IMG/VR virus record: IMGVR_UViG_3300017917_001123
Span: 124,001 to 188,000 of that record
DNA: 64,000 nt
Direction: 5' to 3' (one strand)
Shown here: piece after piece, positions 8,601-58,832 of the stretch
Layout: each line of letters opens with the position of its first letter
Position numbering within the stretch: the first letter of the stretch is position 1
Notes under the pieces: generated by a model
Told to the model about the DNA's origin: nothing
Seen by the model: only the letters and a program-made list of their open reading frames with translations
The model's database searches: none
Position numbers and translations under genes: made by a program

Positions 8601-8607
8601 ATAGACT

Positions 8608-12976: not shown

Positions 12977-12988
12977 GTTTGACTGAAG

Positions 12989-13761: not shown

Positions 13762-13767
13762 TAAATA
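13762..13767 (+). promoter_or_regulatory. Late promoter TAAATA (leaderless transcript)
   Basis: 5 nt upstream of the ATG at 13773; no SD. Confidence 0.6.
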
Positions 13768-13772
13768 CTGGC

Positions 13773-14439: not shown

Positions 14440-14455
14440 TAAATAAAGCATAAAG
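14440..14455 (+). promoter_or_regulatory. Late promoter TAAATAAAGCATAAAG
   Basis: TAAATA upstream of SD AAGGA; the 16-mer is identical to 34753-34768. Confidence 0.7.
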
Positions 14456-16550: not shown

Positions 16551-16647
16551 TAAATAACTGTGATGCCGCGTTTCGGCAGAACATACTGTGGTAAACCCGC
16601 AATGTAAGGTGGTTATCCGTGAAACACGGTGGATATGAGGAGCTAGT
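16551..16647 (+). promoter_or_regulatory. Late promoter followed by an ~85-nt structured 5' leader (three hairpins) upstream of the 3591-aa gene
   Basis: TAAATA 16551-16556; TGCCG/CGGCA 16564-16578; ACAT..TGTGG/CCGCA.ATGT 16581-16605; CCGTG-AAA-CACGG 16617-16629; SD GAGGAG 16637-16642. Confidence 0.6.
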
Positions 16648-27438: not shown

Positions 27439-27825
27439 ATGGCACTAATTCCATTAAACACGTTTAAAACTAAAACATTTGTTTTAACAACTACAACTAA
27501 CGCAACGGTTTATACTGCTCCAGTAGGAGTAACTTCGATTGTTTTGATGGCCAACGTTGCGAACGTTAGTACAAATACAAATGCTAGCGTTACGTTTGCT
27601 CACCATAGAAATCTTCCAGTGCTAGCAGATGCTCAAGGAAACGGCGGCCAACCCGGCAACGTAACGACTGAGCTAGTTAAGAATTTTGAAATTCCTCCAA
27701 GCGATGCTGGAAACATGCTAGTAGGAAAAATGATTGTTGAAAGTCTAGACAGCATTAGAGCATACGCAACAGTTGAAGGCACACTAAAACTTACAATGAG
27801 CATTCTAGAAACAGCTAACCAATAA
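27439..27825 (+). CDS. Small beta-sandwich-like virion protein, 128 aa
   Basis: VYTAPVGVTSIVLMANVAN...IPPSDA...KMIVESLDSI; related to 15502-15831; SD AAGGA. Confidence 0.75.
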   Translation: MALIPLNTFKTKTFVLTTTTNATVYTAPVGVTSIVLMANVANVSTNTNASVTFAHHRNLPVLADAQGNGGQPGNVTTELVKNFEIPPSDAGNMLVGKMIVESLDSIRAYATVEGTLKLTMSILETANQ

Positions 27826-27837: not shown

Positions 27838-30800
27838 ATGCCAGGATTACTAAGCGGCCGTGTAAAAGTATCAGCAGGTACTAATTACACTATTAACAAT
27901 TATATTAGTCTAAACCAAGCGCAAGCAGGCTTAGGCGTTACACCTACATCTGGTACAGGATACACACTGGTTATTGGTCCAGACGGTGTAGCAACCTTTA
28001 CAAATACTTTAGGTAACATTGGATTTGAAAACGGTGTTATAACCTCGCAAAGTACAACTGGTGACTTAACATTAAATCCAAGTGGTACTGGTACTATTAC
28101 ACTTAATGGTCCTGTTAATATTCCTGATGGTATTATTGGTTCTGGTTTTAAGAAAGAAGTTGTTGTTGCGTCAACTAGTGATGTTCTTGTTAACACATCA
28201 ACAAGTTTGATTGTTGTTGATGGTTTCAAATTAAATTATTTAGATCGTGTTTTATTAAAAGCACAAGCAAATCCTGCGCAAAACGGTATCTATTATGTAA
28301 GTACAGCATCGTTAGTTAACGATGTATTCACTGCTTCGGCATACAGCACTTCGTCTAACTGGGACGGTACTGTAATTGCGTTTGATAATCCGACTCCATT
28401 TATGGCACAGTTGCTTGATAAAGTAACTGCCGGTACAACATTCTTTGTCTATGACTTAGACAACGTTGCTTATAACGTAACGCTATCATCAGAATTTACG
28501 CAAAGCAACGGAGCCTATACTGCCACCACAGTAATTGCTTCCCCTACATCGGTTGTTAGTACAATTAGTCAAGCAATTTTTATTGCTACTAGCGCAACAA
28601 ACGCAGTATTGACACGTACTACAGACGCTGACAGTACAAGAAAATTAAATCACGTAGCTGTTCCTGTCCTGTACGGAACTAGCGGCGGCCGTTTATTCTT
28701 TACTAATTTTACTTCGTTTGGAATAGTTGATGTAGATCCAGTTAACTGGTACGAAATTGTTGACTCAGTATCTGGACAAAATGTTGCTAACAAAATTTTA
28801 GATGCTTCGTCAATTGGTATAAACACTCCAGGCGTCGGTAGATTTACATATCTAGACGCAGTTACTCAATTAGCAGTTTCAGCATCTACTGATTCAACCG
28901 CAACTGACAATGGTGCTGTCACTGTAGCCGGCGGCGTTGGAATTACAAAGAACTTATGGGTCGGCGGAGCAACAAACATTGCTGGCAGCTTAAATGTTTT
29001 AAGTCAAGCAAATCTAAGTCCAACAGGAGCAACAGTCTTTATTCAACCAAGCGGTGCTGGTTCTGTTGTAATTAATCCAGCAACAAAAGGTACAATGGAC
29101 AATGTTGACATTGGAAACGTAATTCCTGCCAACGGTACCTTTAATATTTTAAATGCGACAACACAACTTCGTGTAACAACAAGTACAAATTCTACAAGTA
29201 CAACAACCGGTGCTCTTGTTGTTGATGGCGGTGTCGGTATTGCCGGCGATTTAGTACTAGGCGGACAGTTAATCTTTAGTGGTGCGGCTGACGAATTTAT
29301 TGTAAACAATTTCCGTGCTCTAGGACAAGTTCTGTTTACAACAAGTACTAATTCAACTTCAACAACCACAGGCGGCTTAGTTGTATCTGGCGGTGTTGGC
29401 ATTGCTCAAGACTTAGTATTAGGCGGTAGTTTAATATTTGACGGCGACGCCGGAGAAATTCGTGTACGTCAATTAAAAGTTACTAGCACTCTAAGTTCAA
29501 CTTCTACTACAACCGGTGCTATTGTTGTAACAGGTGGCCAAGGTATTGGTGAGAACTTAAACGTCGGTGGCGATGTTACCATTGGCGGTAATTTGATCTT
29601 TACTGGTGAATCGCCTGATCTACGTGCTCAACAGTTGCGTGTAAGCGGAACAGCAACTTCTACAAGCACAACAACTGGTGCTTTACAGGTTGTAGGCGGT
29701 GTAGGTATTGGTCAAGATCTATGGCTAGGCGGAAACTTAAACTTTGCTAGTGCTCAAGGACAAATTAATGCCTTCCAAGTCCGAGTAACTGGAACAGAAA
29801 CTTCTACAAGTACGCAAACAGGCGCACTTGTTGTTGACGGTGGTGTAGGTATTGGCAAAGATGTTGTAATCGGCGGAAACTTAGATTTAGGCGGTCAATT
29901 AACATTTAACAAATCATTTACAGCAACCTTTGTTGCCCTACACATAACAAGTACAGCAAGCAATGTAAGTGACTTTGAAGATAACGCAGTTTATGTCGAA
30001 GGCGGCCTATCGCTTAAGAAAGATCTAAGTGTTTACGGAAATACTGTTGTTAGCGGTAACTTAACAGTATTAGGAACACAGACTTTTGTTGACAGTACTC
30101 AAACATATATTATTGACCCTGTATTGGACATTGGTACAGGAATCGGTAATACAGCTTTAACAACCAACGACGGTTTAGATCGAGGAATTTTATTACATTA
30201 TAATACAGGTGCGTCAGAAGCAACAAACAATCACGCATTCCTTGGTAGAGATGCTTCTACAGGTGACTTGGTTTATAAGTTTAACGTATATCCTGGCCCA
30301 GGTGAAGACTTTGCTCCGGCGTTTGCTGGCACAGGAACATTTGGTACAGCAAGATTTGGAACCCAGCGACTAGTTGGCGGAGTTGCTTCAATTAGCACCA
30401 ACACAGGCGATCTTCAAGTACTTGGTGGTATAGGTGTAACTAAGACTTCTTATTTTGCTGATCGTGTAACTCTGGCAAGCACTTTAGCAAATTCAACACA
30501 AACTGCCAACCATGCGTTAGTGGTCCCAACAGGCGGCATTGGTGTAGCAGGCGATTCTTACTTTGGTGGTATTGTACGTTTTGGAAACGGAACAGCAACA
30601 ACAAGCCCAACAACCGGCGCAGTATTGTTTAACGGTGGCCTTGGAGTGGGCGGTGGTGCTCAGATTTCTGGTCCTGTCAAGATTTTAAACGGAACAGCCG
30701 CAACAAGTACAACAACTGGCGCTCTACAAGTTGTTGGTGGCGTAGGTATTCAAGGCGATCTGTATGTTAGAAACGTCTATACATTAGATGGCGAAAACAT

Positions 30801-33800
30801 TGAGCGTTTTAATGGCGGAACAATTACTGCTCCGTTGTTAGTTGACAATACCTCAAACGCATTTAGTACAACAACTGGTGCTGTCGTAGTAACAGGTGGT
30901 CAAGGCATTGGTAGAGATCTATGGGTCGGCGGAACAGGTTTCATGGGAGACTTGTTTGTTAACGGCGCAAGAGTATTAACTACAGCAACTCCAACCGGAT
31001 TTAACGGTGGTACAATTATCTATCCGTTACAGATTGGTTATACTACTTCAACACTAAACACAACAGGTCTAACTGTTAACTCAGACATTAACGCTGTAAG
31101 CACTGACACAGGTGCTATTGTAACAATAGGCGGTATTGGTTTAGGTAAAGACTTGTGGATTGGCGGAACAATTTATCGTAACAACGATGTTACTAAACCT
31201 ACTTGGGGCAACGACGGTATTGCTGTAAACTTAGGAAGTGCTACATTTACAGACAATCAAGGATCTGGTAATTTTACAAATACACAAATGGTCTATGTTG
31301 GTCAACCAACATTTAGAGGACAGTTTGGTATTAACTACGATCGTGCCCAAACAATCTTTATTGAAGGTGCTCCGAAAGAAGGACAAAACACAACGATTGC
31401 TGACTCTTACGCAATTTGGGTCAATGATGGTAGAGTTCATATTGCTTCTTCAGCAACATCAGCAACAAACTATCTAAACAACGCACTGAGTGTTGATGGT
31501 GGTATTGGTGTTAAGGGCGGTGTTCAAATCACTGGTGACATTAAAGCCCAAGCAGTCTTTGATAACGGTAATCGTGTAGTTAGTTTTGTTGACCTTCAAG
31601 CAGGCAACGACGGAATTTTAGTTGCTCAAAGCCCAGCAGGCGGCCCAACAGCAACAATTTTTGTAAGCAACGCAGGTGTTGTTGAGGCAAATGCCGGAAC
31701 TGGTATTAACTTAGATCAGAGCCGCGGCACAATTACAATTACAAACATAGGTGTTACAGATTTAACTCCGACACAAGGTATTGGAATCTCAACAAGTACT
31801 GGTTCCGTTTCAATCTTTAACCTAGGTGTTACAAGTTTAACAGCTGGCACAGATACTGCGGTTTCAAGCACAACAAGTAATGTTGTAATTTGGAATACAT
31901 CGACTCTAGAAACAGTAACAGGTCGTGGCGGTTCAACACCTAACCCGATTGAAATTACAAACACAACAAGCAACGCATTTACAGTTGCTGGTACAGCAAA
32001 CTTTAACAATGTAACAGTTGGCGGTACATTAAGTGCTGGTAGTTCAACATTCTTTGGAAGTACAGGTTCTTTCATTGACTTAACGGTTTCTGGAAGCACA
32101 TTACTAAATGGTAATGTTACTATCGCTGGTACAGCAACTTATGTAAACAGCCAACAATTAACTGTAGTTGACCCAGTTATTGATATCGGAACTAATGTTA
32201 ATAACTCTCCGTTATTAGCTAATGACGGTTATGACCGCGGTATGTTAATCCACTACAATAGTGGAGCTGACATTACAGGAGATGCTCACGCATTCTTAGG
32301 TCGTGTAAACAGTAGCGGCAAACTAACATATCGTACAAACATTTGGCCAGGCGGCATAACTGATGTTCCAAATCCTTTTGGTTCAACAGGCACACTAGGA
32401 TCAGCGTTATTTGCTGGACTAGAATTACAAGGCGGCCTAGCATCAAGTGGTCAAGGAACTGGCGACTTACAAGTTACCGGCGGAATCTACGCAGGCGGAA
32501 ATTCTTACTTAGACGGTAAACTTCGTTTAGCAGATACACAAAACGCTATTTCAACACTAACCGGCGCACTAACAGTTGCTGGTGGTATTGGTGTTGGTAA
32601 GAACGTTTATGTTGACGGAGACGTTATTGTTCGTGGCTACGTTTTAACAACAGCAACAGCGTATAACGGCGGCGAAGTTTATAATCCAGTTGTTATTACA
32701 AACGGAACACCGGCAACAAACACACTAACAGGTGCGTTAATTGTACACGACGGTGGCGCAGGTATTGGTGGCGATGTTTGGGTAGGCGGAAGTGTAAATG
32801 CTTCAGCATTCTTTATTGATGGTCGTCCAGTAACAACCGACATTCACTTAGTAACTGGCCCCGGTTTAATTGGTGATGTTACAACAGCTACAAACGGTGT
32901 TACAATTACTATGACCAACACAGGTGTATTAACACTTGAAGGCGGCCCTGGTATTAACATTTGGAACACAGGAACAAGCGGAGTTACTACTGTAACTAAC
33001 GTCGGTGTTGTAACGTTAGACACAAGTGGCCCTGGATTACGTGCTACAACAAGCACAGGTTCTGTAACATTAATTAACTTAGGTGTTACAAGTGCTATTG
33101 CTGGAGCAGGTATTGGTGTAAGTCAAAGCACTGGCTCAGTTATTATTAACAACTTAGGCGTTTACAGCATTGGTATTATCGGCGATGGCTTAACAGCAAC
33201 AACATCAACTGGTTCTGTATTCTTAATTAACTCAGGTGTTACAAGTTTAACAGCTGGAACAGATACAGCGATTACCCAAACTACTGGCGCTATCGAAATT
33301 TGGAATACCTCAACATTACAGACTGTTACAAATCGTGGTAACGAAACAACAAATCAACTTTATCTAAACAACACTACACAGGCTAACAATACATTTAGTG
33401 GCGCACTACAAGTATTAGGCGGTGTTGGTATTGGTAAGAACCTGTATGTTGCTGGTAAGATTGTTGGTCAAGGCGGATACGAAGGATTAAATCCACCGGC
33501 TATCTTTGTAAACACAAGCTCTGTAACTGTTTATGATTCTGGTACAGTTCGTCAAGTTGACGTTGTAATTGCTAACAATACAACAACGGTGTTTAACAAT
33601 ACTGGCATTAACGTTAAAACAAACGTCGAAGCAACATCGACTGGAACTGGAGCAATTACAGTACTAGGCGGTATCGGTGTAAGCGGCACAGTTTATGGTG
33701 CGGCATTTAACGGTCCAAACGATACTGTAAGTATTACAAGTGGAACAACTGTCGGAGCAAGCCTAACAGCGACAGGTAAGATTTACGCTATTGGTGGTTA

Positions 33801-34728
33801 CGAAGGTCTAAATCCGTTCAAATTGTTTACTGGAACAAGCAGTTTAACTGTTGTTGACACAGGAGTTGAACCTCGTTATGTTAATGTTAATGTTAGCGGA
33901 ACTAACGTAACCAACTTCTATCAGTCTAATGTTTATATTCCTGTAACATTAAACGCAGACGACGTTGTTTCTACAGGAACAATTACTCGTAGCGGAAATA
34001 TAACTCAGGGCGCTTGGGGAACAACTGGTGTAGGTATTAGCGTACCTTCAGCAACTTATACTGATTCTAACAGTAACGGTAGTGTAGCAAACGCACACAT
34101 TAGTGCGTTTGGAGCACCGACTATTGCTTCTTCAAATACAGTAAGTTTTACTAATGCTTCAACTGTTTATATTGGCGGAGCACCGACAAGTGGCGGCGCA
34201 AACACAACTCTAAACAATGCTTGGAGCTTGTATGTTGCTAACGGTAAAGTTAAGATTGCAGATACTACTTTAAGCAATTCTGCGTCTACCGGAGCATTAC
34301 AGGTAGAGGGCGGTGTAGGTGTTAAGGGCAACATTAACGTCGACGGTTACTTAGATGTAAACAGCGAAGTGATGTATGTTGGAAACAGCGAAATCCGTAC
34401 ATATACAAGTGCTGAAATTACAGCACAAACTACTGTAAACTTAGATACATTTGCTACAGGAACTTATCAATCAGCCAAGTACTTTATCCAGGTTGTTGAT
34501 AACACATCGGTTGGACAGCCAAACAGAATGTATGTAACTGAGCTAATTGTTTATCATGACAGTATTGGCGGAGTGTACATCCAAGAATACGGTATGAGCA
34601 GTAACTTTGGAGACCTAGGAGATTTTGAAGCTGTTCTAAATGGCTCAGATATCCAGCTAAGATTTACTCCAAATTACGACCCAACTAGCATGGTTGTTAA
34701 GGTACATAGAACTACTCTAAGTCGCTAA
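27838..34728 (+). CDS. Giant Thr/Gly-rich fibre-like protein, 2296 aa
   Basis: Many STSTTTGAL(V/Q)VxGGVGIG repeats; two DRG..H..HAFLGR modules; C-terminal LDTF..GTYQSAKYFIQV..EL..HD..EYG domain typical of large-phage fibres. Confidence 0.88.
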   Translation: MPGLLSGRVKVSAGTNYTINNYISLNQAQAGLGVTPTSGTGYTLVIGPDGVATFTNTLGNIGFENGVITSQSTTGDLTLNPSGTGTITLNGPVNIPDGIIGSGFKKEVVVASTSDVLVNTSTSLIVVDGFKLNYLDRVLLKAQANPAQNGIYYVSTASLVNDVFTASAYSTSSNWDGTVIAFDNPTPFMAQLLDKVTAGTTFFVYDLDNVAYNVTLSSEFTQSNGAYTATTVIASPTSVVSTISQAIFIATSATNAVLTRTTDADSTRKLNHVAVPVLYGTSGGRLFFTNFTSFGIVDVDPVNWYEIVDSVSGQNVANKILDASSIGINTPGVGRFTYLDAVTQLAVSASTDSTATDNGAVTVAGGVGITKNLWVGGATNIAGSLNVLSQANLSPTGATVFIQPSGAGSVVINPATKGTMDNVDIGNVIPANGTFNILNATTQLRVTTSTNSTSTTTGALVVDGGVGIAGDLVLGGQLIFSGAADEFIVNNFRALGQVLFTTSTNSTSTTTGGLVVSGGVGIAQDLVLGGSLIFDGDAGEIRVRQLKVTSTLSSTSTTTGAIVVTGGQGIGENLNVGGDVTIGGNLIFTGESPDLRAQQLRVSGTATSTSTTTGALQVVGGVGIGQDLWLGGNLNFASAQGQINAFQVRVTGTETSTSTQTGALVVDGGVGIGKDVVIGGNLDLGGQLTFNKSFTATFVALHITSTASNVSDFEDNAVYVEGGLSLKKDLSVYGNTVVSGNLTVLGTQTFVDSTQTYIIDPVLDIGTGIGNTALTTNDGLDRGILLHYNTGASEATNNHAFLGRDASTGDLVYKFNVYPGPGEDFAPAFAGTGTFGTARFGTQRLVGGVASISTNTGDLQVLGGIGVTKTSYFADRVTLASTLANSTQTANHALVVPTGGIGVAGDSYFGGIVRFGNGTATTSPTTGAVLFNGGLGVGGGAQISGPVKILNGTAATSTTTGALQVVGGVGIQGDLYVRNVYTLDGENIERFNGGTITAPLLVDNTSNAFSTTTGAVVVTGGQGIGRDLWVGGTGFMGDLFVNGARVLTTATPTGFNGGTIIYPLQIGYTTSTLNTTGLTVNSDINAVSTDTGAIVTIGGIGLGKDLWIGGTIYRNNDVTKPTWGNDGIAVNLGSATFTDNQGSGNFTNTQMVYVGQPTFRGQFGINYDRAQTIFIEGAPKEGQNTTIADSYAIWVNDGRVHIASSATSATNYLNNALSVDGGIGVKGGVQITGDIKAQAVFDNGNRVVSFVDLQAGNDGILVAQSPAGGPTATIFVSNAGVVEANAGTGINLDQSRGTITITNIGVTDLTPTQGIGISTSTGSVSIFNLGVTSLTAGTDTAVSSTTSNVVIWNTSTLETVTGRGGSTPNPIEITNTTSNAFTVAGTANFNNVTVGGTLSAGSSTFFGSTGSFIDLTVSGSTLLNGNVTIAGTATYVNSQQLTVVDPVIDIGTNVNNSPLLANDGYDRGMLIHYNSGADITGDAHAFLGRVNSSGKLTYRTNIWPGGITDVPNPFGSTGTLGSALFAGLELQGGLASSGQGTGDLQVTGGIYAGGNSYLDGKLRLADTQNAISTLTGALTVAGGIGVGKNVYVDGDVIVRGYVLTTATAYNGGEVYNPVVITNGTPATNTLTGALIVHDGGAGIGGDVWVGGSVNASAFFIDGRPVTTDIHLVTGPGLIGDVTTATNGVTITMTNTGVLTLEGGPGINIWNTGTSGVTTVTNVGVVTLDTSGPGLRATTSTGSVTLINLGVTSAIAGAGIGVSQSTGSVIINNLGVYSIGIIGDGLTATTSTGSVFLINSGVTSLTAGTDTAITQTTGAIEIWNTSTLQTVTNRGNETTNQLYLNNTTQANNTFSGALQVLGGVGIGKNLYVAGKIVGQGGYEGLNPPAIFVNTSSVTVYDSGTVRQVDVVIANNTTTVFNNTGINVKTNVEATSTGTGAITVLGGIGVSGTVYGAAFNGPNDTVSITSGTTVGASLTATGKIYAIGGYEGLNPFKLFTGTSSLTVVDTGVEPRYVNVNVSGTNVTNFYQSNVYIPVTLNADDVVSTGTITRSGNITQGAWGTTGVGISVPSATYTDSNSNGSVANAHISAFGAPTIASSNTVSFTNASTVYIGGAPTSGGANTTLNNAWSLYVANGKVKIADTTLSNSASTGALQVEGGVGVKGNINVDGYLDVNSEVMYVGNSEIRTYTSAEITAQTTVNLDTFATGTYQSAKYFIQVVDNTSVGQPNRMYVTELIVYHDSIGGVYIQEYGMSSNFGDLGDFEAVLNGSDIQLRFTPNYDPTSMVVKVHRTTLSR

Positions 34729-37700
34729 AAACCCGAGTTTCCCTCTCTTTGGTAAATAAAGCATAAAGCAATATTTTGCCATACGTGGAGAGGGAAACTA
34801 ATGGCTTCGTATAACGACGATTTTATAGTCAAGAACGGCCTCATTGTCAGGGCCAACAACTTATCAAATTACCAATCAACTAGCACAACAACCGGTGCGA
34901 TAGTAACACCCGGCGGAGTGGGCATTGGCGGTGATGTAAACATTGGAGGAAGACTCAATGTTGATACATCTGCTACGCTAGCTGAATTATCTGTCGAAGG
35001 CATTACGAAAATCCTTTCAACAGCAACAAATACCGCAACAATAACTCCCGATGGCAATGCTCTACAAGTGTTTGGCGGAATCTACGCCGAAAACATTAAT
35101 TTATCTGGCATTGGTTTAATCAAAGGTTCTCGAATCTTAACGGTTGCTGAAGGCTTCCAGGGCGGTATCATCGCCGAACCGTTAATTATTAACACAACAA
35201 CTAATTCTACAAGTACCACAACTGGTGCTTTAGTTACTCCTGGCGGTATTGGTGTTGGCAGTGATGTTCATATCGGTGGCAGCGTTTGGACTACCGGAAC
35301 ATCGTATGTAACTGGTAGTATTTTTGGCGGCGAAAAACATGTACTAAACACAGTACAGTTTAACGGTAACAGCTACGTTTCAGCAAAAGTAGTTCAAAAT
35401 GGTTATACTGCTACTGTAACCTTAACTAACACCGGTGTAACAAGCCTTGTTGCTGGAACAGGTATTAGTGTCAGTACATCTACAGGAACCGTAACAGTAG
35501 GTAATACTGGTGTTCTAAGTATTATTTCGGGCGGTGGCGAGCTTCAAGTTGACCAAGCAACCGGAAACGTAACATTAACTGTTGCTAGTACTCTACAAGA
35601 CGTTGTCCTACGTGGCAATCAAACTGACCAAACTATTGCGATTAACAACCCAACCGATGTTTTAACTACATCAGGAAACGCACTAGATGTATTAGGAAGT
35701 ATTGGCGCCTACAGAATTAACGTAGTAACAACTTCATACGTTGCTGGCGCACAAATTGTTACAACTGGAACTATTAACCAGTATATTGGCGGAACAATTA
35801 CTCAGCCGCTAAGAATTGCTAACACAACAAGTTCTATTAATACACAAACTGGCGCACTAGTAGTCGATGGCGGTGTCGGTATTGGTGAAAATTTAAATGT
35901 TGGCAAGAATTTTACACTAGGCGGAGACGCAGTAATTTACGGTGGATTGACTGTTGTCGGAAGTTACACAACTGTATTAGTTAACTCTACACAAACAGTT
36001 ATCAGCGATCCTGCTATTGATTTAGGCGCAGGATTTAACGGTGCTCCTCTCGAAATAAACGACGGTTTAGACAGAGGTCTTGTACTTCACTTTAACACTG
36101 GAACTTCTGTACTACACGAAGGTCACGCATTCTTAGGTCGGCAAGCAACTAGCGGTGAATTAGTCTTTTTAACAAATCTAACAACAGGAACATCACACTC
36201 AGTTCCGAATCCTTATTCTGGAGATTGGGGCAATGTAAGATTTGGCCAGCTACGCTTAACTAGTAGCGAAAACGCATCGAGTACAACAACTGGTGCTCTA
36301 GTAACTGTTGGTGGTATTGGTGTCGGCGGCGATGTATATGCCACAAGAGTGTTTGATGGCGGAGCAAGAGTTGTTAGTGTTGTTAATATTACAACAGGCT
36401 CTGGATTAGCAATCACAAGTTCTGTAAACACAGGACCTAATGTAAGTTACGCAATAACAAACACAGGTGTTCTTTCTGTAACAACTGGTAATGGTATTTT
36501 AATTACAGGCGATGCTCAAAATCCTGTAGTACAAAACATTGGTGTTGTTAATTTACAAGTATCAACAGATCCAACTGAAAACGATTTAAGCGTTTCTTCA
36601 AACGGAATTAGAACATTCTTTGTTGGAAACACAAGTACATTACAAACTGTAACTGCTCGCGGAAATGAAACTACTTCTGAAATTATTATTCTAAATCAGA
36701 CAACAAGTACCGAAGTAACTTCAACTAACGCATTACAGGTACTTGGCGGTATTAGTGCTAAGACATTATTAATTACAGACAAGGCATATTTAAATGGTGC
36801 TGAAGTTGTTACTTCTGCTACAATTAATGCTTTCTCTGGTGGTACAATTAACAACAGCTTAAAGATTAACTCAGGTGAAACATCAACAAGCACAAGTTCT
36901 GGTGCGTTAGTTGTTAACGGAGGTTTAGGTGTAACAGATAACATGAATATCTGGAACACAATTAAGCAATGGAACACAAATACAACTGGTATTGTTGCTT
37001 ACGGTACTTCTGAATTTCACAATACTCTTTTTGCTAACACACTATCTGCTCTTTCAACAAATCTAAACATTGTAAGTCAAGGAACTGGTTCAGTTTATAT
37101 CAACGGTGTTAATCTGTTAGCATATGATGCCAACGTGTGGTATGTATCTGAAGCAGGAAGTGACTCTAGCGATGGTCGAAGAATTGCCAGCGCATTCAAA
37201 ACTATTAAACACGCTCTAAGTGTTGCCCAGCCAAGTGATGTTGTCTTTATTGAAGCAGGCACATACGAGGAAGTATGGCCATTAACAGTCCCACAAGGTG
37301 TAACTGTTAAGGGTGCTGGTGTTCGTGCTACTATTGTTAAGCCGACTGTTGGTACAAATACACAGAACGGTTTCCAATTAAATGGCGAAACAACAGTCAG
37401 CGACCTTTGTGTTGAAGGTTTCTTCAAACCAGGTTACGCATTTACATTCGCTACTGGCGCAAAGATTACAACAAAGAGTCCATACGTTGAACGTGTAAGT
37501 GTTATTACACGCGGTAGCTCAACAAGCTCAACAGATCCTTATGGATTTGCGGCAGCTGATGCGGGTAACGGTGCTAAACTTGATGCTGGTGTATTAGATC
37601 CAACATCATTAGAACCAGCAATGTTATGGAACGAGGTAACATTCATTGTTCCAAACGCAACTGGTTGGTATATGACCAACGGTGCTCGTGCTGAAATTCT

Positions 37701-40700
37701 AAACGGCTTCTCATATTTTGCTGACAAGGCAATTCACGCAGTAGCAGGTACAACAGGTTACGGTGGTGTAGGTAAGACAAGACTTAAACTTGAAAATATC
37801 AACGGCGTGTTTAAGTCTGGTGAAACAATTACTTACGAAGATCCAAATAATAACATCCTTGCCCAAGGTACTATTTCAAGCACAGCAAGCGGATACATCT
37901 TTATCACTGGTCCAAGCTACGGCTTTGAAACAATCACTGATCGTGCTGGTAAGACTGTAACAACGTATGGCGACGCAGTACAAAGTACAATCCAGAAGAA
38001 GTTTGGTACAACTGCCGGTAAGTTTGACGGCAACGGTGATTACCTAGAAGTACTAAGCGACACAGACTTAGTGCTAAATGGTCAAGACTACACTATTGAA
38101 GCATGGGTGTATCTAAGCGGACTAGGAAAAACACAACGTATTGCTCGTAAAGGTGTTTCAACTCCGGCGGCATATGAGTTAGCAATTACAAGCTCGAACG
38201 TAGTTGCCGCGTACCATGGCGGAACAACTATTGTTGGTACTACAGCGTTAACAACAGGTCAATGGTACCATGTTGCTCTGTCTAGACAGAATTCGTCAAA
38301 TACAATTAAATTATATCTAAACGGTACATTAGAAGCTTCAAGTACAAGTGCTAGCGGTGGAGTATCAAATACAGATCCGTTAAGTATCGGTGGCTGGGCA
38401 TCAGTGGCAGCAGATTCCTTAAACGGTTACATGGATGACTTCCGCGTTAGTAACAACTATCGCTATCCAAGCAACTTTACTGCTCCAACAACAGAATTAA
38501 TTTCTGATGCCAATACAGTTCTGTTACTAAACATGAATGGTGGTAACGGTGTTACTGGGTTTATTGATACTGCTGAAGGTTCACAAGACATTTATTCAAG
38601 TGGCGGAGCAACTGCTACAAGAATTGCCCTAGCCGATTATCATCAGTTTGGTGCTGAATTACGTTGTATTGGTTCTGCGGCAGTATTTGGTAATAGCGGT
38701 GTTGTTGCTGACGGTACTGGTACTAACTTAAAGATCATTGCCTTCAACATGAGCCACATTGGTTCGGGCGGTGACTTGTCAGATGACGATAGTCTACACA
38801 ACCAAGCCAACGAAGTTATTATGGTTAACAATGGTAAGGTTTATTACCAGACTGTTGACCACTTAGGCGACTTCCGTGTAGGCGAGCAATTCATTGTTAA
38901 CCAACGTACAGGTAATGTAAGTTTTGGTAACGCACAAGTTAACTTGAGCGGATTAAATCAATTAACAATTACCGACGGTACAAATAACGCAACAATTCTT
39001 CCACAAAGTATTAGTGTTGGTAATTTATCTTTAGCAGGAAATACAATTTCCTCATTGAGCGGAAACCTAACACTTGATCCGGCAGGAACATTAACAACAG
39101 TTAACAGCGACCTAGCAGTCAATGGTTCATTCTCTGTTCAAACACTAGCAGTTCCTGGAGTTGATCAATCAACTTCAACATTAACTGGAGCAATGACTGT
39201 TGCAGGTGGAGCAGGCATTGGCGGCAACTTAAATGTTGGCGGAACATTTACAACTTATGTAACAGCAAGCTCTACATCAACAATTGCCAATAACGCAATC
39301 CAAGCAGTTAATGGTGGCGTTGGTGCGAAAACAATCTACATTGAAGAAGACGGTTGGATCGGAACTAACCGCATTGTTACAACAGCAACTATTGGAGCAA
39401 GTTTAGGTGGTATTGTTCCAAACGCAATTCATATTACAAATACCGACGCCAACTTTGGAAATACAACTTCCGGTGCTCTAATTGTTGACGGTGGTGCGGC
39501 TGTTGCTGGAAACTTAACAGTCGGTGGCGACTTAACATTATTAGGCGGCGGTTCTGTATTGACTAATGTTGCGGTAACTACTGATGCCTATATTGGGGCA
39601 AGCGTAGTTAAGGCAGGTACAACTGCTACAATTAACATTGTTAATTTGGGTGTTCAAAGCCTAACAGCAGGATCTGGTATTGCTGTGTCTGCTTCAACTG
39701 GCACAGTGACAATCGATTCGACAGATACCTTAGGGGACGTAACATCACGTGGTGCTACAACTGCTGACGCAATCTCATTAACAAGTACTGCTTTAAACAG
39801 TTCAACTATTGCTAACAACGCTCTTTCAGTTAGCGGCGGGATTGGTGCTGATAGTTTATACATTGCTCGCTTCGGTTGGTTAGCAGGTAGCGAAATTGTT
39901 ACAACTGCTACACTAGGACAGGCATTTAACAGCTCAACACAAGTTACTGGACAGTTTAACATTACCAACACATCAAGCAACGCCTTCTATGTTGCTGGTG
40001 GAGGTACAGTTGGCGGAAACTTTACAATTGGTGGAAACTTAACTGTAAACGGAACTGTAACTTCAGTAGACAGTAACTCAGTTAACATTGGTAACAAAGT
40101 TGTTTATCTATCAACACTAACTGGTAGTGCGGCTCTTTCTGCAGGTTCTGGTATTATTGTCGGTAAGGATGATAATAATCCAACAACTGACTGGGCAACA
40201 TGGATTTATGACGGCGGCGAGCCGGGCTTCTGGACAACTACAAACGGCATCAAGCCGATGCGTGATGATCTAGAATTTGGAACTGTCAACGGATATTGGT
40301 GGAAGACCGGCGCAATCAAAGACTTGTACTTTGATCAAGCAGTATCTACAAGCACATCATTTAACACAGCAACAGTAGCAGGAAATGCTCTTCGCCTACC
40401 AAACGGCGGTATTGGTGCTAAGACTCTACACTTAACAGATGAGGGTTGGATTGCTGGTGCTAAGATTGTTACTTCTGCTAACTTTAATCAGTTTGCTACA
40501 GACTTTGATGGCGGAACAATCAGCCAAGCTCTGGTTATTAATAACAATACTCCGGCAACAAATACAACAACTGGTGCGTTAGAAGTATTAGGTGGCGCCG
40601 GAATTGGACAAGCACTATATGTTGGCAAGAGTGTTTATATTAACGAAACATTAGACGTAACAGGAAGTGCTTTAATTCAAAGTGTAACAACATCGACAGC

Positions 40701-43700
40701 AATTAACAACGGCGCATTAGTTGTTAATGGCGGTGTTGGTATTGGTCAAAACTTGCGTGTTAACACTAGCGTTGACATCGGCGAAGCGTTACGTGTAACT
40801 GGAGATGTTTACGCAAATAGCGGAAAGATCTATCTGCCAAGTGGAACACAGTTTGCTGATGACGGAATTGGCAACGCAACAGTTTCTGGTTCTTCATTAA
40901 CATTAACAGCAAATACAAGCTCAGTTGTAATTAACAGCGTAACTGGAACAAAAGTTAACGGCGGATTTAGCGCAACTGGTGTTGTTCAAGTACTTGACGC
41001 AACTGTAGCATCAAGCACAACAACAGGTGCCCTACAGGTAGTAGGCGGCATCAGCACACAGGATGGAATATATTCTGCTAAAGATATTACTACTAACGAA
41101 AGCATAATTGCTGGCGGCGCCTATAAGAGCACTAGCTCAATTGCTGGTAATGTTATTACAGCTCCGAACGGCGGTATTGGCGCCCAGACGCTATATCTAA
41201 GCGAAAGCGGTTATATCAACGGCGCACAGATTATTACAAGTGCTACATTGAATAGCTTCACTGGTGGCGCAATTAACAACAGCTTATTTGTAAACAACGA
41301 CACACAATCAACAAGTACAGTAACAGGTGCTTTAGTTGTAACAGGCGGTGTTGGTATTGGTAAGAACTTGTTTGTTGGCGGAAACACCTACTTACAAGGA
41401 GACTTATTCATTGACGGCGCATCATTTATGCTGTCAAGCAACACTATTCAGACTGGTGATAAGTTAATCTACGTAAGTACAGGAGCTACAAGTTCTCTAC
41501 TAGCAACAAACTCTGGTATTGGAGTTGGTCCAGTAGGTTCAGCATACGCAACATGGTTGTTTGATAACGCATCTACTTCGTGGAAGTCAACTGTAAACAT
41601 CACAGGCGACGCATCACACAGCTTAGGTATTGCTCTAAATCCTTGGGGAACTGCTTACGTTAATACAGTTTATGTAAGAAGTAATATTACAGCTACAAAT
41701 ACAACAACTGGCTCTTTACAAGTACTAGGTGGTATTTCAGCAAGCGAGAATTTATTCTTAGCAAGCACACGTAGCAACACATTAACAAATACAGCAAATG
41801 CTCTAACAGCATTAGGCGGAGCATGGATTGGCGGCGAACTAAACGTAGCAGGCACAACTGGTTGGATCAATAATAGCCCAATCATTACTGCTAACAGTCC
41901 GTTTGATGTAATTTTAACAAGCACAACAGATGCTTCTGCTACCAACACCGGAGCACTACAAGTTGTAGGCGGCGTTGGCATTGGTAAGAACTTAGTTGTT
42001 GGAGAGAAGATTGTTGTACCTAACTTACTAGGTTCAACTTCGACTGCTAACGACAACGCTCTAGTAGTAAGTGGCGGTGGCTACTTTGACAGTCTAATGG
42101 TTAATACTGTAGCAACAGTAGCCGGCGGCATTGTAATTACAACAGCAACAATTGGCGACTACGCATTTAATGGCGGTACAATTAACAAGCCAATCGTTAT
42201 TAACTCTGCCACACAGTCTATTAGCACAACAACAGGTGCTTTACAGATTGTCAACGGCGGAGCAGGCGTTGGCGGAAACGTTTATGTCGGTCAAACATTA
42301 TATGTTGCTGGAACAAGCACATTCTTCCAGACTTCAACATTTAAGACAATCGTTGCTGGTACAGCAACATTTACAACAGCAACCGTAACAAGTGCTATTG
42401 CTAACACATCAACTGCGGCAGGCAATGCCTTCCAAGTAACAGGCGGTGGTAGCTTTGGATTCCTGCGTGTTGCTAACCAAGCATGGGTTAACGGTTCTCC
42501 AGTAATTACTGCGGCTAACATTAATCAGTTTAGCGGCGGAACTATTACTAATGACCTAACTATTGATAGCCCAACACAATCACTAAGCACAATAACTGGT
42601 GCGTTCCGTGTAATTAACGGTGGCGTTGGTATTGGCGGAAATGTATTTGCTGGCGGATCATTAAACACAATTGATCCGACTGGATCTGTTGACGGATTCT
42701 TTGGTCCAAACGATTTATTAACAGCATTAGAGATTGGTACAAACACTCTAAACAAACCTGTTGATATTATTGTTAACAATGTTCCTGTAGCAAGATTTAC
42801 AGATAGTCAAAACTTTGCGATTGGTGGAAATCATAACCCAATTTACGGTGTTGATGTTTATACACCAAGTGCTCCTACCTGGGCCGCAAACACAGTTTCT
42901 AACTTATTAAGTCTACGTTCAAGCCAGTGGGCAGATTTATATTCATCAAATGTTTCTAGATTTGCTATTGGAGCAATTTCAACAGACTTTGGTTCAACAT
43001 TTGAACACTGGATTACTTCGGGCGAACAAACAGCAGGTAACGCAGAACCATTAGTATTTGCTGGCGGCGCATGGGCAGACAGTAACGACGGTGCGACAAA
43101 CACAGTAACTGAATGGGCTCGCTTTACTGCTACTGGTAACTTTACTGCTAAGAACTACATTATTACAACTAATGCGGCAATCAACACAGCAACAATTAGT
43201 GGTAATGCTCTTCAAGTCACTGGCGGTATTGGCGCAAGTAGTTTATTAATCAACGGTAAGGCATGGGTAAGAAGCGGAGCAACAAGCTACGAAGTCATCC
43301 ACGCAGGTAACGTTAACCAGTTTGGTTTTAACGGCGGAACTATTACTCAACCGTTGTATGTAAACACAAATACTCAGGCAGTAAACGCAACAAGCGGTGC
43401 TATCAGAACTGCTGGCGGTATCTCAGCAGTTGGTAACATTTACGCAGGTGCTAACTTCTACGGTAACTTAATTGCTACAAACATCACAGCAACAAACATT
43501 AATGCTCGAGGCAATGAAATTACAATTGGCGGTCCAGCAATTTTCTCAACCGCAACAACAGCAACACAAACTGGTGGTGTTATTGGTGGAGCCGGTGTAC
43601 AGGTTACAGGCGGCCTAGCAGTAAATCAAAATGCAATCGTAGGCGGAAGTTCGTTCAGCTTAACATCAATTGAAGGCAACGCAGTCCAAGTACCAAACGG

Positions 43701-46700
43701 TGGACTAGGAACTGCTTACTTGTATGTTGCTAATGAGGGTTATATCAACGGAGCTCAGATTGTTACATCAGCAACAATTAACAGCTTCTCAGGCGGTGAA
43801 ATTGCTAACGCACTATACCTAAGCAATACAACTGATGCTACAAGCACATCAACAGGTGCTCTAAGAGTAGCAGGCGGTGTTGGCATTGGTAAGAACTTAT
43901 GGGTAGGTGCCGACGTTAACATTTTAGGTAACTTATATGTTGACGGAACCTCTTACACATTAAGCTCAACTAATATTGAAACTGGCAACAAGGTAATTTA
44001 CCTAAGTACAAGTTCACCAAATGCCGCAGGAGCAGTTAACGCAGGTATTGCTGTCGGTAACACAGTCGCTCCTTGGGCATCGTTCTTCTTTAACGGTATT
44101 AACTCTTGGAGCTCTCAAGGTAATATTATTCCAAGTACCGCAGGCGGATTTGGTCTAGGTGACTCAACAACACCGTGGAATACTGTACACTCACAAAACG
44201 GTAGATTCTATGCCACAACAGATGCTAGCTCAACACAAACTGGCGCATTACAAGTTGTAGGTGGCGTAGGAATTGGCAAAAAATTAGTTGTAGGAAGTTC
44301 AGCAACTGTTCTAAGTTCTGAATTTAACCTAACAACATCGACCTTCAATGCCCTAACAGTAGTTGGTGGTATTGGTGGTCGCTACTTAACAATTGACGTA
44401 GCAGGTTACATTAACGGAAGCCAGATTATTACTGCGGCTAACATCGGTGGCTATGCTTACAATGGCGGTATTGTTAATACTCCAATTGTACAAAACTCAA
44501 CACTTGATGCTACATCATTAAGCACCGGTTCTATTGTAACAGCAGGCGGTGCGGCAATTAACAAACAACTTCAAGTTGGTTACACAGCAACTATTGCAAG
44601 TTCTGCGTTTAGCACAAGTACTATTGCTAATAACGCACTAGCAGTAACTGGTGGTATCGGTGCTCGTTCGCTATACTTAACAACAGAAGGTTGGATCAAT
44701 GGTAGCCCAATTATTACTGCGGCTAACATCAACAGCTTCTCTGGCGGTACAATCAACAGCACACTGGCAATTAACAATGCTACACAGGCAATTAACACAA
44801 CCACTGGTGCTTTACAGGTTATCAACGGTGGCGTTGGTATTGGCGGCAACGTATGGGCGGGCGGCACAGGTAACTTTGGCGTTACAACAAATGCCGCAGG
44901 TACATTAGGAACAACTGCTTCTGGTTCGCTAACTGTTTTAGGTGGCGCAAGTGTAAGCGGTCTAATGAACGTAGGCGGTGCGGCATGGTTTGGTGGTAAC
45001 GTTGGTGTTCAAACAGCTACCCCTGGTGTTGCTCTTGAAGTTAACGGAAACTTTGTAGTAGGCGCTTATAACAGCTCACGTGTTCAGATTGTTAACGCAG
45101 GCGGAACAAACGCAATCTATGAAGTATCAACAACTGAATCTAACCCACGTTGGACAATTGGTCGTGACTTACTAGGCATTGGCGTAGCAGGTTTAGGCTT
45201 CATGAACGCTAACCAGGCATTAGGTACTGGTGGTGCGGCAGTTGGCGCAGTTTCTGCTTCAACAGGATTCTTAGGTCTATACACAACAAACGGAACTTCG
45301 CAGACATTACGAGCAGTAATCGACAGCGGCGCTTCTGGCGGTAACATGGGCTTAGGTATTACAAGTAGCTTACAAGGTAAGTTACACGTTCAAGGAGCTG
45401 CCGCAACAGGTTACGGCATCTATGCTCGTGGCGCACAAGATCACGTGTTCTTATCAAACAACGCGGCCAACTATTCAAATATTCAAATTTCGAGAACAAC
45501 AAGTGGTGTTGGCTCGGCCGCAGATATTAGAATTGGTGCCGCAGGCGGAGCAAGTAACTTCCTACCAACAGCCGTACAAGGCGATGCTGTAATTACATTC
45601 GGTCAGAAAGTACTATTTGGTCAACAAAGTGCGTTTGAAGTTGCTAGAATTGACGGAACAGGTATTGCTATTGCTACTGCTACTTCAGCAATTAGCGTTT
45701 CAAGCGGCGCATTGCGTGTAACAGGTGGTGCTGGAATTGGCGAAAACTTATATGTTGGTGGCTTATTCAGCGCAACAGGTACTGCGTTCGTTGGAAGCGC
45801 AATCGCAAGCACAAGTACTAAGGCAGGCAATGCTCTTGTTGTTACCGGTGGTATTGGTGCTGCAAGTTTATGGTTAGATAATAACGGTTGGATCAACGGT
45901 TATCAAATTGTTACAACTCAAAACATTGGCGCCCTAACTGGTGCGTTCAATGGTGGTACAATCACTAATCCATTGTATATTAACAATACAACTGACAGCG
46001 GTTCTACAAGCTCTGGAGCATTGTACACAACTGGTGGTATTGGTATTACTAAACAACTTTATGTTGGCGGTACTACAACTTTAGCAGGTGCTACTAATGC
46101 AAGCGGTATTGTAACAGTTATTAACGCAACAGCCGCAGTAAGCACAACAACTGGCGGCTTGAAAGTAACTAACGGTGGCTTAGGTGTAGGCGGTGCTGGT
46201 TACTTTGGAACATTTATTAACTTAGACAGTAACACTACAACACCTACGTTAATTGGTTCTGGTAATATTGGCCGTTCAGGCGGCGACCTAACTGTTCAGG
46301 CGGGTGCTACAACATTTAGTGCTTCTAGAGCTTACGCTCAGTTTATTAATGGCGGTGGCGTTACACTATACGGCGGCGGTGTCGGCACAACAGGTAACAT
46401 TACATTAGACGGTGGCGCAAGTGAAGTTGTTGTTTCTAAGATAACTAACGCAACTAACACAGCAACAGGTGCCTTACAGGTACGTGGTGGCGTAGCAGTC
46501 GGTAACGGATTAGTTGTAGGCGGACAAGCAACAGTTATTGGAGCAACAAGTCTTCAAGGAACAACTATTGCTGGCGTAACACAAATTACTAATATTACAT
46601 CAGCTACAAGCACATTAACTGGCGCTTTACAAGTGTTTGGTGGTGTCGGCGTTCAAGGCGATATCTATGCTCGTAACATCTACGCTAACGGTGTGCTAGT

Positions 46701-47760
46701 TGGCACAGGTGGCGGTGGCGGTGGCGGTGGATCGTCAACACTAACAGAATACATTTCTGTAACAAGCTCAACCGTAGCACTATCAACCACAACTGGCGCA
46801 GTTCGTGTAACAGGTGGTGTTGGTATTGGTAAGAACTTATTTGTTGCTGGTCCAATAACAGTTGGCGGATCTACATCGTTTATTGACACAAGTGCCCAAA
46901 TTCAAGCTAATGGCGGAATTCAAGCATCCGGTTCTGTTGTTGGTAAAGACATGTATGCTTCTGGTGGTAACCTACTAGTTCAAAGCTCAGACTTTACACA
47001 GGCTAACTGGGCTAAGTTTAACAGCACAGTACAAGCAGGTTCTACAATTAGCCCAGACGGTACACTAAATGGTACTAAGTTAATCGAAACTGCGGCAACT
47101 GGTGGTCACTACTTCCAGCAGACAATTAGTCAAACTGGTCCGATTACATTTAGCGCATTCTTAAAAGCAGGTGAACGTACATTTGCTATCTTGAACGCTA
47201 CTGTAGCAGGTCAACCACATGCGGCTTGGTTCAACTTAACAACAGGTGCTCCAGCAACTAAGCAGGAAAGCCTATACAAAGTTGATAGTCGTTGCGAACT
47301 TCTACCATACGGAGCAAGTTCAGGATGGTATCGTTGCTCAATCACTGTGTGGGCTCCAACAAGTGCTACAACAACTGCTGTAGGTATCTATACAGCATTG
47401 GGCAGTGAAAGTGTAATTACTGGTACATTAAGTTCTTATACAGGTACAGCTGGTAACGGTTTATATGTATATGGAGCACAAGCTGAGCCAGGTTACTATC
47501 CAGGTGACTATTTTGCTACTGCGGCATCAACAGTTGCTCCAACAGCTAATAGCTATGTAGGTGGAAGTCTATATGTTGCTAACACAGGTACAGTTGGTGG
47601 TTCACCGATTGTAACTTCAGCTAACCTAATGACATACTGGGGTGGCACAAGTGCTAACACCTTACAGATGACAAATACAACTAACGCAACAAGTACACAA
47701 ACTGGTGCGTTACAAGTTGTAGGTGGTGTTGGCATTGGCAAAGATGTTTGGATCGGCGGT
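28900..47760 (+). repeat. Dispersed protein-level fibre repeat (S/T)-x-T-T-G-A-L-x-V-x-G-G-x-G-I-G, dozens of copies across the 2296- and 4437-aa proteins
   Basis: Visible throughout both translations; a few copies also occur in the 818-aa fibre. Exact count not made. Confidence 0.85.
34736..34799 (+). promoter_or_regulatory. SD-sequestering 12-bp inverted repeat with a late promoter in its loop
   Basis: AGTTTCCCTCTC (34736-34747) is the exact reverse complement of GAGAGGGAAACT (34788-34799), which overlaps the SD-like GGAGAGGG; TAAATA at 34753-34758 lies between the arms. Confidence 0.8.
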
Positions 47761-58804: not shown

Positions 58805-58811
58805 AGTGATG

Positions 58812-58827: not shown

Positions 58828-58832
58828 ATCGT

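What the first reader, a model, noticed from the sequence alone, without database searches (positions are those of the whole stretch)
34736..34803. Perfect 12-bp hairpin hides the ribosome-binding site of the 4437-aa gene unless transcription starts at the promoter in its loop
Seen: AGTTTCCCTCTC pairs exactly with GAGAGGGAAACT, covering most of the SD region up to 1 nt before the ATG, and TAAATA lies between the arms. Known: T4 uses this arrangement (e.g. genes e, soc, 49, I-TevI) to silence translation from read-through transcripts. Inference: read-through mRNA from the 3591/2296-aa operon cannot translate the largest protein, so its timing and stoichiometry are set independently.
Basis: partly seen in the sequence, partly recalled or inferred. 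Interest (0 to 1): 0.6.

Follow-up and report, generated by a model that had tools for sequence, protein, structure and literature searches.

The report
Hairpin hides ribosome site; promoter inside
In an uncultured 332-kb pond phage, the ribosome-binding site of a giant 4437-aa baseplate gene is locked in a conserved RNA hairpin, and only transcripts that start at a T4-type late promoter inside the hairpin should escape it; this is the classic phage T4 device, found here in a distant jumbo-phage lineage.

Summary
Arms 34736-34747 and 34788-34799 pair perfectly (12 bp, plus a U·G and an inner 7-bp helix; -26.7 kcal/mol). The 3' arm holds the Shine-Dalgarno sequence and ends 1 nt before the ATG at 34801. 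TAAATA (34753-34758) lies between the arms.

A 12-bp inverted repeat alone is not beyond chance in 64 kb. Other evidence makes it real:
- In 10 related metagenomic phages, the 5' arm varies only C<->U opposite G and never opposite A.
- A second clade pairs a different arm with the same site (G-C, G-U, A-U series).
- TAAATA is the core of the genome's late-promoter motif. It is depleted genome-wide, half its copies are intergenic, and a gp55-like sigma factor is encoded. It sits about 40 nt upstream of this gene in most of 41 orthologous leaders.
- Orthologues without the arm often carry an intrinsic terminator at the same place.
- Five late promoters in this genome share the design, against 0.26 expected.

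No RNA data exist, so the transcription start and the translational block are inferred. Verdict: a new member of the T4 e/soc/49/I-TevI kind, here separating late units.

Side findings: about 29 predicted leaderless late genes, and a conserved structured leader RNA on the 3591-aa gene that has no Rfam match.

The parts
27838..34728 (+). Upstream 2296-aa structural gene, the last gene of the predicted unit 3591 aa / 128 aa / 2296 aa. Its stop codon TAA is at 34726-34728, 7 nt before the stem.
   Evidence: phrog_697 structural protein, E 6.8e-23
34736..34748 (+). 5' arm (anti-SD arm): 12 Watson-Crick pairs plus T34748·G34787. It is present only in RNA that starts upstream of the loop promoter.
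34750..34756 (+). 5' half of the inner 7-bp helix (TGGTAAA). It overlaps the first four bases of the promoter core.
34753..34758 (+). TAAATA, core of the T4-type (gp55-type) late promoter, in the context GGTAAATAA. This is a variant 18-fold enriched upstream of ORFs in this genome.
34763..34765 (+). Predicted transcription start, about 6 nt after the motif (inferred, not mapped).
   Evidence: Spacing rule from the TAAATA-N5-ATG class and from the T4 late promoter sitting at the -10 position (PMC2988020).
34775..34781 (+). 3' half of the inner helix (TTTGCCA).
34787..34799 (+). 3' arm, containing the Shine-Dalgarno sequence (GGAG/GAGG, 34787-34794). It ends 1 nt before the ATG.
34801..48114 (+). 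4437-aa gene: a giant baseplate-wedge-like structural protein.
   Evidence: (phrog_13163 baseplate wedge subunit, E 6.5e-177)

Best explanation
This is a T4-type promoter-in-hairpin translational insulator.

RNA polymerase that transcribes the upstream late unit (3591 aa / 128 aa / 2296 aa) meets no terminator and runs into the 4437-aa gene. In that long RNA the pyrimidine-rich 5' arm (34736-34748) pairs with the SD-containing 3' arm (34787-34799), and an inner 7-bp helix stacks on top. 30S subunits therefore cannot bind. The ribosome terminating at 34726-34728 stops just short of the stem and does not open it.

A gp55-type late promoter (TAAATA, 34753-34758) lies in the loop. RNA started there, at about 34764, lacks both 5' strands. 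It has an essentially unstructured 37-nt leader and is translated. Output of the giant baseplate protein is therefore set by its own promoter alone.

Shown: the anatomy, RNA-level conservation of the helix, the reality and conserved position of the promoter motif, recurrence of the design, and replacement by terminators in orthologues.

Inferred: the start site, the read-through, and the translational block.
For: 1. Structure. The hairpin alone folds at -26.7 kcal/mol. The ensemble cost of opening 34786-34803 is 19.1-19.4 kcal/mol in read-through RNA and 3.9-4.2 kcal/mol in RNA from 34764. The leader from 34764 is unstructured (z = +0.6).

2. Rank. This is the strongest upstream-versus-SD duplex among 349 ORFs of the genome.

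3. Conservation.
- Ten distinct relatives keep the outer helix in 99.2% of cells.
- Five of the six columns opposite G vary, C<->U only. None of the seven columns opposite A, U or C vary (Fisher p = 0.0047).
- The flank and loop are full of transversions.
- RNAalifold finds the same structure on its own.
- With a second clade added, one pair runs C-G:5, U-G:4, U-A:4.
- G·U pairs only work in + strand RNA.

4. Promoter.
- TAAATA occurs only 146 times on both strands.
- Half of the copies lie in the 7.3% of the genome that is intergenic, and 89 lie within 120 nt upstream of a same-strand start.
- GGTAAATA is 18-fold enriched upstream of ORFs.
- A gp55-like late sigma factor is encoded (phrog_12791, E 1.9e-86).
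- The motif sits 35-44 nt before the ATG in 36 of 41 orthologous leaders.
- The related cultured phages CBB and GAP32 have a predicted ATAAATA late motif and a gp55-like factor (PMC5259590).

5. Same niche, other device. Among 41 orthologous junctions, 13 have a strong anti-SD arm and no terminator. Fourteen of the other 28 have a canonical terminator just upstream of TAAATA.

6. Recurrence. Five of 58 leader-bearing TAAATA promoters pair their upstream 30 nt with their own SD at -16 kcal/mol or better, against 0.26 expected. Relatives of two of these keep an anti-SD arm.

7. No terminator-like site lies between the genes.
Against: - There are no transcript data of any kind. The only run holding the sequence is a pond DNA metagenome.
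- The 3' arm was part of the search pattern that retrieved most relatives, so its invariance is partly by construction. L001 and L007 were found by protein search and carry the same arm.
- Within the window's clade no pair changes on both sides. The single compensated pair comes from adding a second clade.
- The hairpin clade is one lineage. Arm and terminator states are phylogenetically clustered, with about 2-4 arm origins on a quick tree, so the exclusivity p-value is inflated.
- The upstream unit appears to be late too, so the T4 rationale (silencing early transcripts) does not obviously apply.
- Five orthologues have no TAAATA, and others have neither arm nor terminator, so insulation is not obligatory.
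- The arm upstream of the 3591-aa gene's promoter is not conserved in relatives.
Confidence: 0.65

Rival explanations
1. The long interrupted duplex (13 + 7 bp) is an RNase III-type processing or stability element. It would cut the polycistronic late RNA between the two giant genes, either protecting the 3' end of the upstream message or, as in the lambda N leader, freeing the downstream SD.
For: About 20 bp of stacked helix with an internal loop is conserved in 10 relatives. The location is exactly intercistronic.
Against: This does not explain why the 3' strand must be the SD. It does not explain why the arm always lies just upstream of a late promoter at five loci with unrelated arm sequences. 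It does not explain why orthologues substitute a terminator. Some other sites have helices too short for RNase III (10 bp). The host and its RNases are unknown.
Confidence: 0.12
2. The hairpin is a translational-coupling device. It keeps the 4437-aa gene silent on polycistronic RNA unless a ribosome finishing the 2296-aa gene melts it, which would fix a ratio between the two proteins.
For: The stop codon lies only 7 nt before the stem in 7 of 10 relatives. Similar logic is established for RNA-phage and operon coupling (established knowledge).
Against: With UAA in the A site, the ribosome's unwinding point (about +11 to +13 from the P site, established knowledge) reaches about 34734-34736, the first pair at most. 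The SD pairs with the distal half of the arm, and the inner helix adds stability. A conserved promoter in the loop would be superfluous. Orthologues with a terminator cannot couple at all.
Confidence: 0.08
3. The hairpin is a non-canonical transcription terminator or pause site that ends the upstream unit.
For: It occupies the position that true terminators occupy in orthologues. It is a stable GC-containing stem.
Against: No U-run follows the stem, the loop is 40 nt, and the terminator scan did not report it. A terminator need not be complementary to the SD.
Confidence: 0.05
4. The repeat is a chance match, or a DNA-level element such as a protein operator or an upstream pyrimidine tract of the promoter, with no RNA role.
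For: A 12-bp inverted repeat is expected about 0.5 times per window by chance. Several late promoters have T-rich upstream DNA.
Against: The C<->U-only variation opposite G breaks DNA symmetry but keeps RNA pairing. The spacing from arm to promoter varies (0-8 nt) among loci while complementarity to each gene's own SD is kept. Recurrence is 5 observed against 0.26 expected.
Confidence: 0.05

Closest known systems
Phage T4 genes e, soc, 49, I-TevI (also I-TevII/III and segB; mobE of Aeromonas phage Aeh1): an RBS-sequestering hairpin with a late promoter placed so that late transcripts lack the 5' strand (PMC3014915, PMC2988022)
   Same: The late promoter is gp55-type (TATAAATA-like). The SD and start region form the 3' strand of a stable helix. 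The promoter lies at or after the 5' strand. The gene sits on longer co-directional transcripts. The predicted effect is that translation occurs only from the gene's own late transcript.
   Different: The host phage is a distant, uncultured 332-kb myovirus whose major capsid protein is about 70% identical to GAP32, CBB and Phosso. The gene is a 13-kb baseplate gene, not a small lysis, decoration or endonuclease gene. The upstream transcript is itself predicted to be late, so the role is insulation between late units rather than early/late timing. The promoter sits in a 40-nt loop that is itself partly helical. Nothing is experimentally shown.
Terminator-plus-late-promoter modules at gene junctions, for example after the major capsid gene in this window (12955-12985, then TAAATA at 12989) and at the orthologous junction in 14 related contigs
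   Same: The position is the same, immediately upstream of TAAATA. The consequence for the downstream gene is the same: expression only from its own promoter.
   Different: A terminator stops the polymerase. The hairpin lets it pass and blocks only ribosome entry.
Predicted ATAAATA late promoters of the jumbo phages CBB and GAP32 (PMC5259590)
   Same: The core motif is the same, it lies upstream of structural genes, and a gp55-like sigma factor is encoded.
   Different: No SD-occluding hairpins are mentioned in the transcription passages I retrieved from that paper. Here the minimal conserved core is TAAATA with variable bases before it.

Membership tests
T4-type late-promoter-in-hairpin translational control | The phage encodes a gp55-type late sigma factor. 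| tested here: met
   Genome 121432-122397: 44% identity to the CBB late sigma factor (E 1.2e-54); phrog_12791 E 1.9e-86 and phrog_234 E 6e-27.
T4-type late-promoter-in-hairpin translational control | A late-promoter motif is placed so that the late transcript lacks the 5' strand of the helix. | tested here: met
   TAAATA at 34753-34758 lies 5 nt after the 5' arm. The motif is validated genome-wide and its position is conserved in orthologues. The start site itself is not mapped.
T4-type late-promoter-in-hairpin translational control | The SD and/or AUG is sequestered in a stable helix that is under selection as RNA. | tested here: met
   -26.7 kcal/mol and a 15 kcal/mol difference in opening cost. 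99.2% of cells are paired, with C<->U-only variation opposite G. A C-G / U-G / U-A series appears at one pair.
T4-type late-promoter-in-hairpin translational control | The gene is also carried on longer transcripts initiated upstream. | not testable with these tools
   There is no terminator-like site between the genes and the spacer is 72 nt, but no RNA run holds this sequence.
T4-type late-promoter-in-hairpin translational control | The longer transcripts are early or middle, giving a temporal switch. | tested here: inconclusive
   The upstream unit consists of structural genes behind a TAAATA promoter at 16551, so it is predicted to be late. Early read-through from further upstream cannot be excluded.
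T4-type late-promoter-in-hairpin translational control | Translation from long transcripts is repressed and is relieved by removing the 5' strand. | not testable with these tools
   This needs reporter, toeprint or ribosome-profiling experiments.
Intrinsic (Rho-independent) terminator | A short GC-rich stem-loop followed directly by a U-run. | tested here: not met
   The loop is 40 nt, and the bases after the stem are AAUGGCUUCG. The scan did not report it.
Any Rfam family | A match to a curated covariance model. | tested here: not met
   No hit at E <= 1 in 34400-35100.

The most novel reading that the evidence does not exclude
The hairpin may be one face of a genome-wide rule in this phage lineage: a late cistron is translatable only on RNA that begins at its own promoter. 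Three interchangeable devices would enforce the rule.
- Anti-SD arms placed just upstream of the promoter: 5 loci here, and at least 2 arm lineages at this junction.
- Terminators at the same spot.
- About 29 promoters placed so that transcription starts on the AUG itself. Such leaderless genes have no SD, so they are untranslatable when internal to a read-through RNA.

Together these cover more than half of the 63 intergenic late promoters.
Probability: 0.3. Interest if true: 0.65.

Novelty: new member of a known kind. Interest (0 to 1): 0.45.

Why it matters
It extends a textbook T4 post-transcriptional device to an uncultured freshwater jumbo-phage lineage. There the device controls a 13-kb structural gene and appears to separate late units from one another rather than early from late.

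The orthologous junctions form a natural experiment: anti-SD arm, terminator, bare promoter, or no promoter. This bears on how phages set the dosage of very large virion proteins on long polycistronic RNAs.

The locus is also a compact, portable part for synthetic biology (promoter-dependent translation). It flags two further features worth study: massive use of predicted leaderless late mRNAs, and an unclassified structured leader RNA.

Tried and rejected
- **Cultured relatives.** Megablast of 33000-37000, tblastn of the first 500 aa, and blastn of the junction against 50,697 phage records gave nothing. No cultured system carries this locus.
- **Expression data.** The run search found only one pond DNA metagenome and two sister runs, with no RNA. 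I therefore did not use read laying, because contigs of DNA runs cannot show 5' ends.
- **Rfam.** No family matched.
- **Sigma-70 promoter or terminator in the spacer.** None was reported.
- **The inverted repeat as evidence on its own.** Rejected, because the chance expectation is about 0.5 per window.
- **The arm upstream of the 3591-aa gene's promoter** (-16.6 kcal/mol here). Relatives give only -5 to -15 kcal/mol, so I do not count it as a robust instance.
- **RNAalifold on three orthologues of the 147-aa gene leader.** It did not recover the anti-SD helix, because the arms are not alignable column by column. The claim for that site rests on single-sequence folds.
- **Arm-versus-terminator exclusivity** (Fisher p = 0.0013). 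A quick tree shows the states are clustered in clades, so I treat the value as descriptive only.
- **Leaderless spacing in cultured phage CBB.** It is absent from a 26-kb structural stretch. It is inconclusive in the fetched metagenomic loci.
- **Not needed.** I ran no protein fold, complex prediction or large protein search.

Full report
**Context.** The window is bases 124001-188000 of a single 331,570-bp contig with 40.9% G+C, classed as a virus record about 93% complete. It is a myovirus with T4-like head genes: portal phrog_213, major head protein phrog_138 and a tail sheath. Its major capsid protein is about 70% identical to those of the jumbo phages Phosso, Vibrio 2.275.O, GAP32 and CBB. 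The only sequencing run that holds the stretch is a pond DNA metagenome. There is no close cultured relative.

The genes around the finding are giant virion genes:
- a 3591-aa tail-fibre-like protein;
- a 2296-aa structural protein;
- after a 72-nt spacer, a 4437-aa protein with a baseplate-wedge-like region.

**The observation.** It is correct to the base.
- The arms are 34736-34747 and 34788-34799: 12 perfect pairs with 40 nt between them.
- The ATG is at 34801 and the SD at 34787-34794, inside the 3' arm.
- TAAATA is at 34753-34758.
- The upstream stop codon is at 34726-34728.
- Folding adds a U·G pair (34748·34787) and an inner 7-bp helix, 34750-34756 with 34775-34781.
- The hairpin alone is -26.7 kcal/mol. 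The 115-nt context has z = -3.8.

As a bare inverted repeat it is not significant. Markov-simulated windows contain 0.52 such repeats on average.

**Is the loop motif a promoter?** TAAATA occurs only 146 times on both strands of the genome. Half of these copies lie in the 7.3% of the genome that is intergenic, and 89 lie within 120 nt upstream of a same-strand ORF start. The most enriched 8-mers upstream of ORFs are all TAAATA variants. GGTAAATA, the variant found here, occurs 8 times against 0.44 expected.

The genome encodes a late sigma factor of the gp55 kind. For the related phages CBB and GAP32, an ATAAATA motif before structural genes and a gp55-like factor have been reported (PMC5259590).

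A sharp class of TAAATA-N5-ATG sites exists: 20 copies, against 1-3 for spacings N0-N4. This class shows that initiation can be no further than 6 nt past the motif. That agrees with the T4 late box sitting at the -10 position (PMC2988020). The start is thus predicted at 34763-34765, 15 nt beyond the 5' arm. This is an inference.

**Is the helix selected?** A protein-based search found two relatives, L001 and L007. A pattern search for the 21-nt translation-initiation region found 52 IMG/VR contigs, giving 43 distinct leaders.

Ten distinct sequences form the window's clade (alignment A3).
- The outer helix is paired in 99.2% of cells.
- RNAalifold predicts the same two-tier structure independently, at -23.2 kcal/mol.
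- The 5' arm varies at five of the six positions that face a G, always C<->U. It varies at none of the seven positions that face A, U or C (Fisher p = 0.0047).
- By contrast, 15 of 16 columns in the 5' flank and 12 of 18 in the loop carry transversions.
- G·U pairs exist only in + strand RNA, so this pattern argues against a DNA-level palindrome.

A second clade (L026, L028, L050, L063) and the singleton L054 carry different arms just upstream of TAAATA. These arms pair with the same SD region. Aligned together, one pair runs C-G:5, U-G:4, U-A:4, and 94.5% of cells pair, against 50-70% when partners are slid.

Caveat: the 3' arm was part of the bait, so its invariance is partly by construction.

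**Energetics.** The ensemble cost of exposing 34786-34803 is 19.1-19.4 kcal/mol in RNA that starts upstream, and 3.9-4.2 kcal/mol in RNA from 34764. The latter leader is no more structured than shuffles.

**Context supports insulation.** No terminator-like site lies between the 2296-aa gene and the ATG. Among 41 full-length orthologous junctions:
- TAAATA lies 35-44 nt before the ATG in 36;
- 13 have an arm-SD duplex of -16 kcal/mol or better, and none of those has a terminator;
- 14 of the remaining 28 have a canonical stem-loop plus T-run immediately upstream of TAAATA.

A quick tree of the N-terminal 250 aa shows that these states are clustered. The hairpin clade is one lineage. The most parsimonious reading gives about four arm origins, but well-supported branches force only one. 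The exclusivity is therefore descriptive rather than a clean statistic. Some orthologues have neither device, or no promoter at all. Insulation is common at this junction but not obligatory.

**Recurrence in this genome.** The 4437-aa gene has the strongest upstream-to-SD duplex of all 349 ORFs, and three of the top four have TAAATA between the arms. Restricting the test to the 58 TAAATA sites with an 18-110 nt leader, five pair their upstream 30 nt with their own SD at -16 kcal/mol or better. Permuting partners predicts 0.26.
- For the 301-aa tail-fibre-like gene, the relative L081 keeps 8 of 10 pairs.
- For a 147-aa gene, L082 and L083 keep an anti-SD arm with altered, mutually complementary sequence.
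- The candidate at the 3591-aa gene's promoter is not conserved, and I discount it.

**Mechanism and rivals.** The best explanation is the T4 device described for e, soc, 49, I-TevI and others (PMC3014915, PMC2988022). Long RNA is untranslatable at this cistron, and RNA from the internal late promoter is translatable.

The terminating ribosome of the upstream gene should reach only about 34734-34738 (established footprint and helicase geometry). That leaves the stem closed, which argues against translational coupling.

An RNase III site, a U-less terminator and a DNA operator are not excluded by experiment. Each of them fails to explain why the 3' strand is always the gene's own SD and why the 5' strand always sits just upstream of a late promoter.

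The difference from T4 is that the upstream unit looks late itself: structural genes behind TAAATA at 16551. The likely purpose is to make the dosage of the giant baseplate protein depend only on its own promoter. It is plausible but untested.

**Novelty.** This is a new member of a known kind. I retrieved no description of it for jumbo phages or for this lineage.

**By-products.**
1. About 29 ORFs have TAAATA ending 5-9 nt before the ATG and no room for an SD. They are predicted to be leaderless or near-leaderless late mRNAs.
2. The roughly 90-nt leader of the 3591-aa gene (16557-16647) is a conserved three-hairpin RNA.
   - It is found in 45 loci, 31 of them distinct.
   - 8 of 15 pairs show compensatory change.
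   - 0 of 500 shuffles reach the observed covariation.
   - Slid controls pair in 30-51% of cells, against 91.8% for the structure.
   - The alignment was fitted to the model, which inflates these counts.
   - It occurs once in the genome and has no Rfam match.
3. Leaderless starts, anti-SD arms and terminators would all tie translation to the gene's own promoter. That unifying reading is offered as the novel case, not as a conclusion.

Noticed in passing
window 13762-13775; 58822-58835 (+); 58804-58817 (-); 8595-8610; genome-wide (G000): Predicted leaderless late genes. TAAATA-N5-ATG occurs 20 times in the genome (1-3 times for N0-N4), and N7 occurs 9 times. 29 ORFs of 66-735 aa have the late-promoter core ending 5-9 nt before the ATG, with no SD. 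Several are divergent back-to-back pairs, for example 58812 (-) and 58822 (+). The pattern is absent from a 26-kb structural stretch of cultured phage CBB.
   Followed up: partly
window 16557-16647 (+), with its promoter TAAATA at 16551-16556: The 5' leader of the 3591-aa tail-fibre-like gene is conserved and structured. It has three hairpins plus a nearly invariant ACTGTGGTAAACC...GCAATGTAAGG core. Covariance model R1 finds it in 45 related loci (31 distinct). 8 of 15 pairs show compensatory changes, and 0 of 500 shuffles reach the observed covariation. It is single-copy in the genome, with no Rfam match and no cultured-phage match. It is a candidate new cis-regulatory RNA, either riboswitch-like or a protein operator.
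   Followed up: partly
loci L013-L075 (orthologues of the 4437-aa gene leader); window 34778-34806: The 21-nt translation-initiation region GTGGARAGGGAARCTAATGGC is exact in 52 IMG/VR contigs, although the codons after ATGGC diverge. In most orthologues outside the window's clade, GCCGTTA at -24 pairs with TAATGGC. That puts the start codon in a 7-bp stem and the SD in a 15-17-nt loop. The window keeps only GCCAT/ATGGC.
   Followed up: partly
G000 25234-25287; 305120-305184; 55353-55380 (loci L078, L079, L080): Three more late promoters in the same genome have an anti-SD arm just upstream of TAAATA. They precede a 301-aa tail-fibre-like gene, a 147-aa gene and another 147-aa gene. Relatives of the first two keep the arrangement.
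   Followed up: partly
window 27439-27825 (+): A 128-aa ORF (phrog_1276, function unknown) sits tightly between the 3591-aa and 2296-aa genes, and each junction has its own SD. The upstream unit therefore has three cistrons, not two.
   Followed up: partly
window 14440-14455 and 34753-34768: The same 16-mer (TAAATA plus the next 10 bases, AAGCATAAAG) follows two late promoters, those of the 341-aa gene at 14467 and of the 4437-aa gene. This suggests a preferred initial transcribed sequence.
   Followed up: no
window 12955-12994: A strong intrinsic terminator after the major head gene is followed within 4 nt by a TAAATA promoter. This is the terminator-plus-promoter module seen at the orthologous junction of the 4437-aa gene in other phages. 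There are 5 such modules genome-wide.
   Followed up: partly
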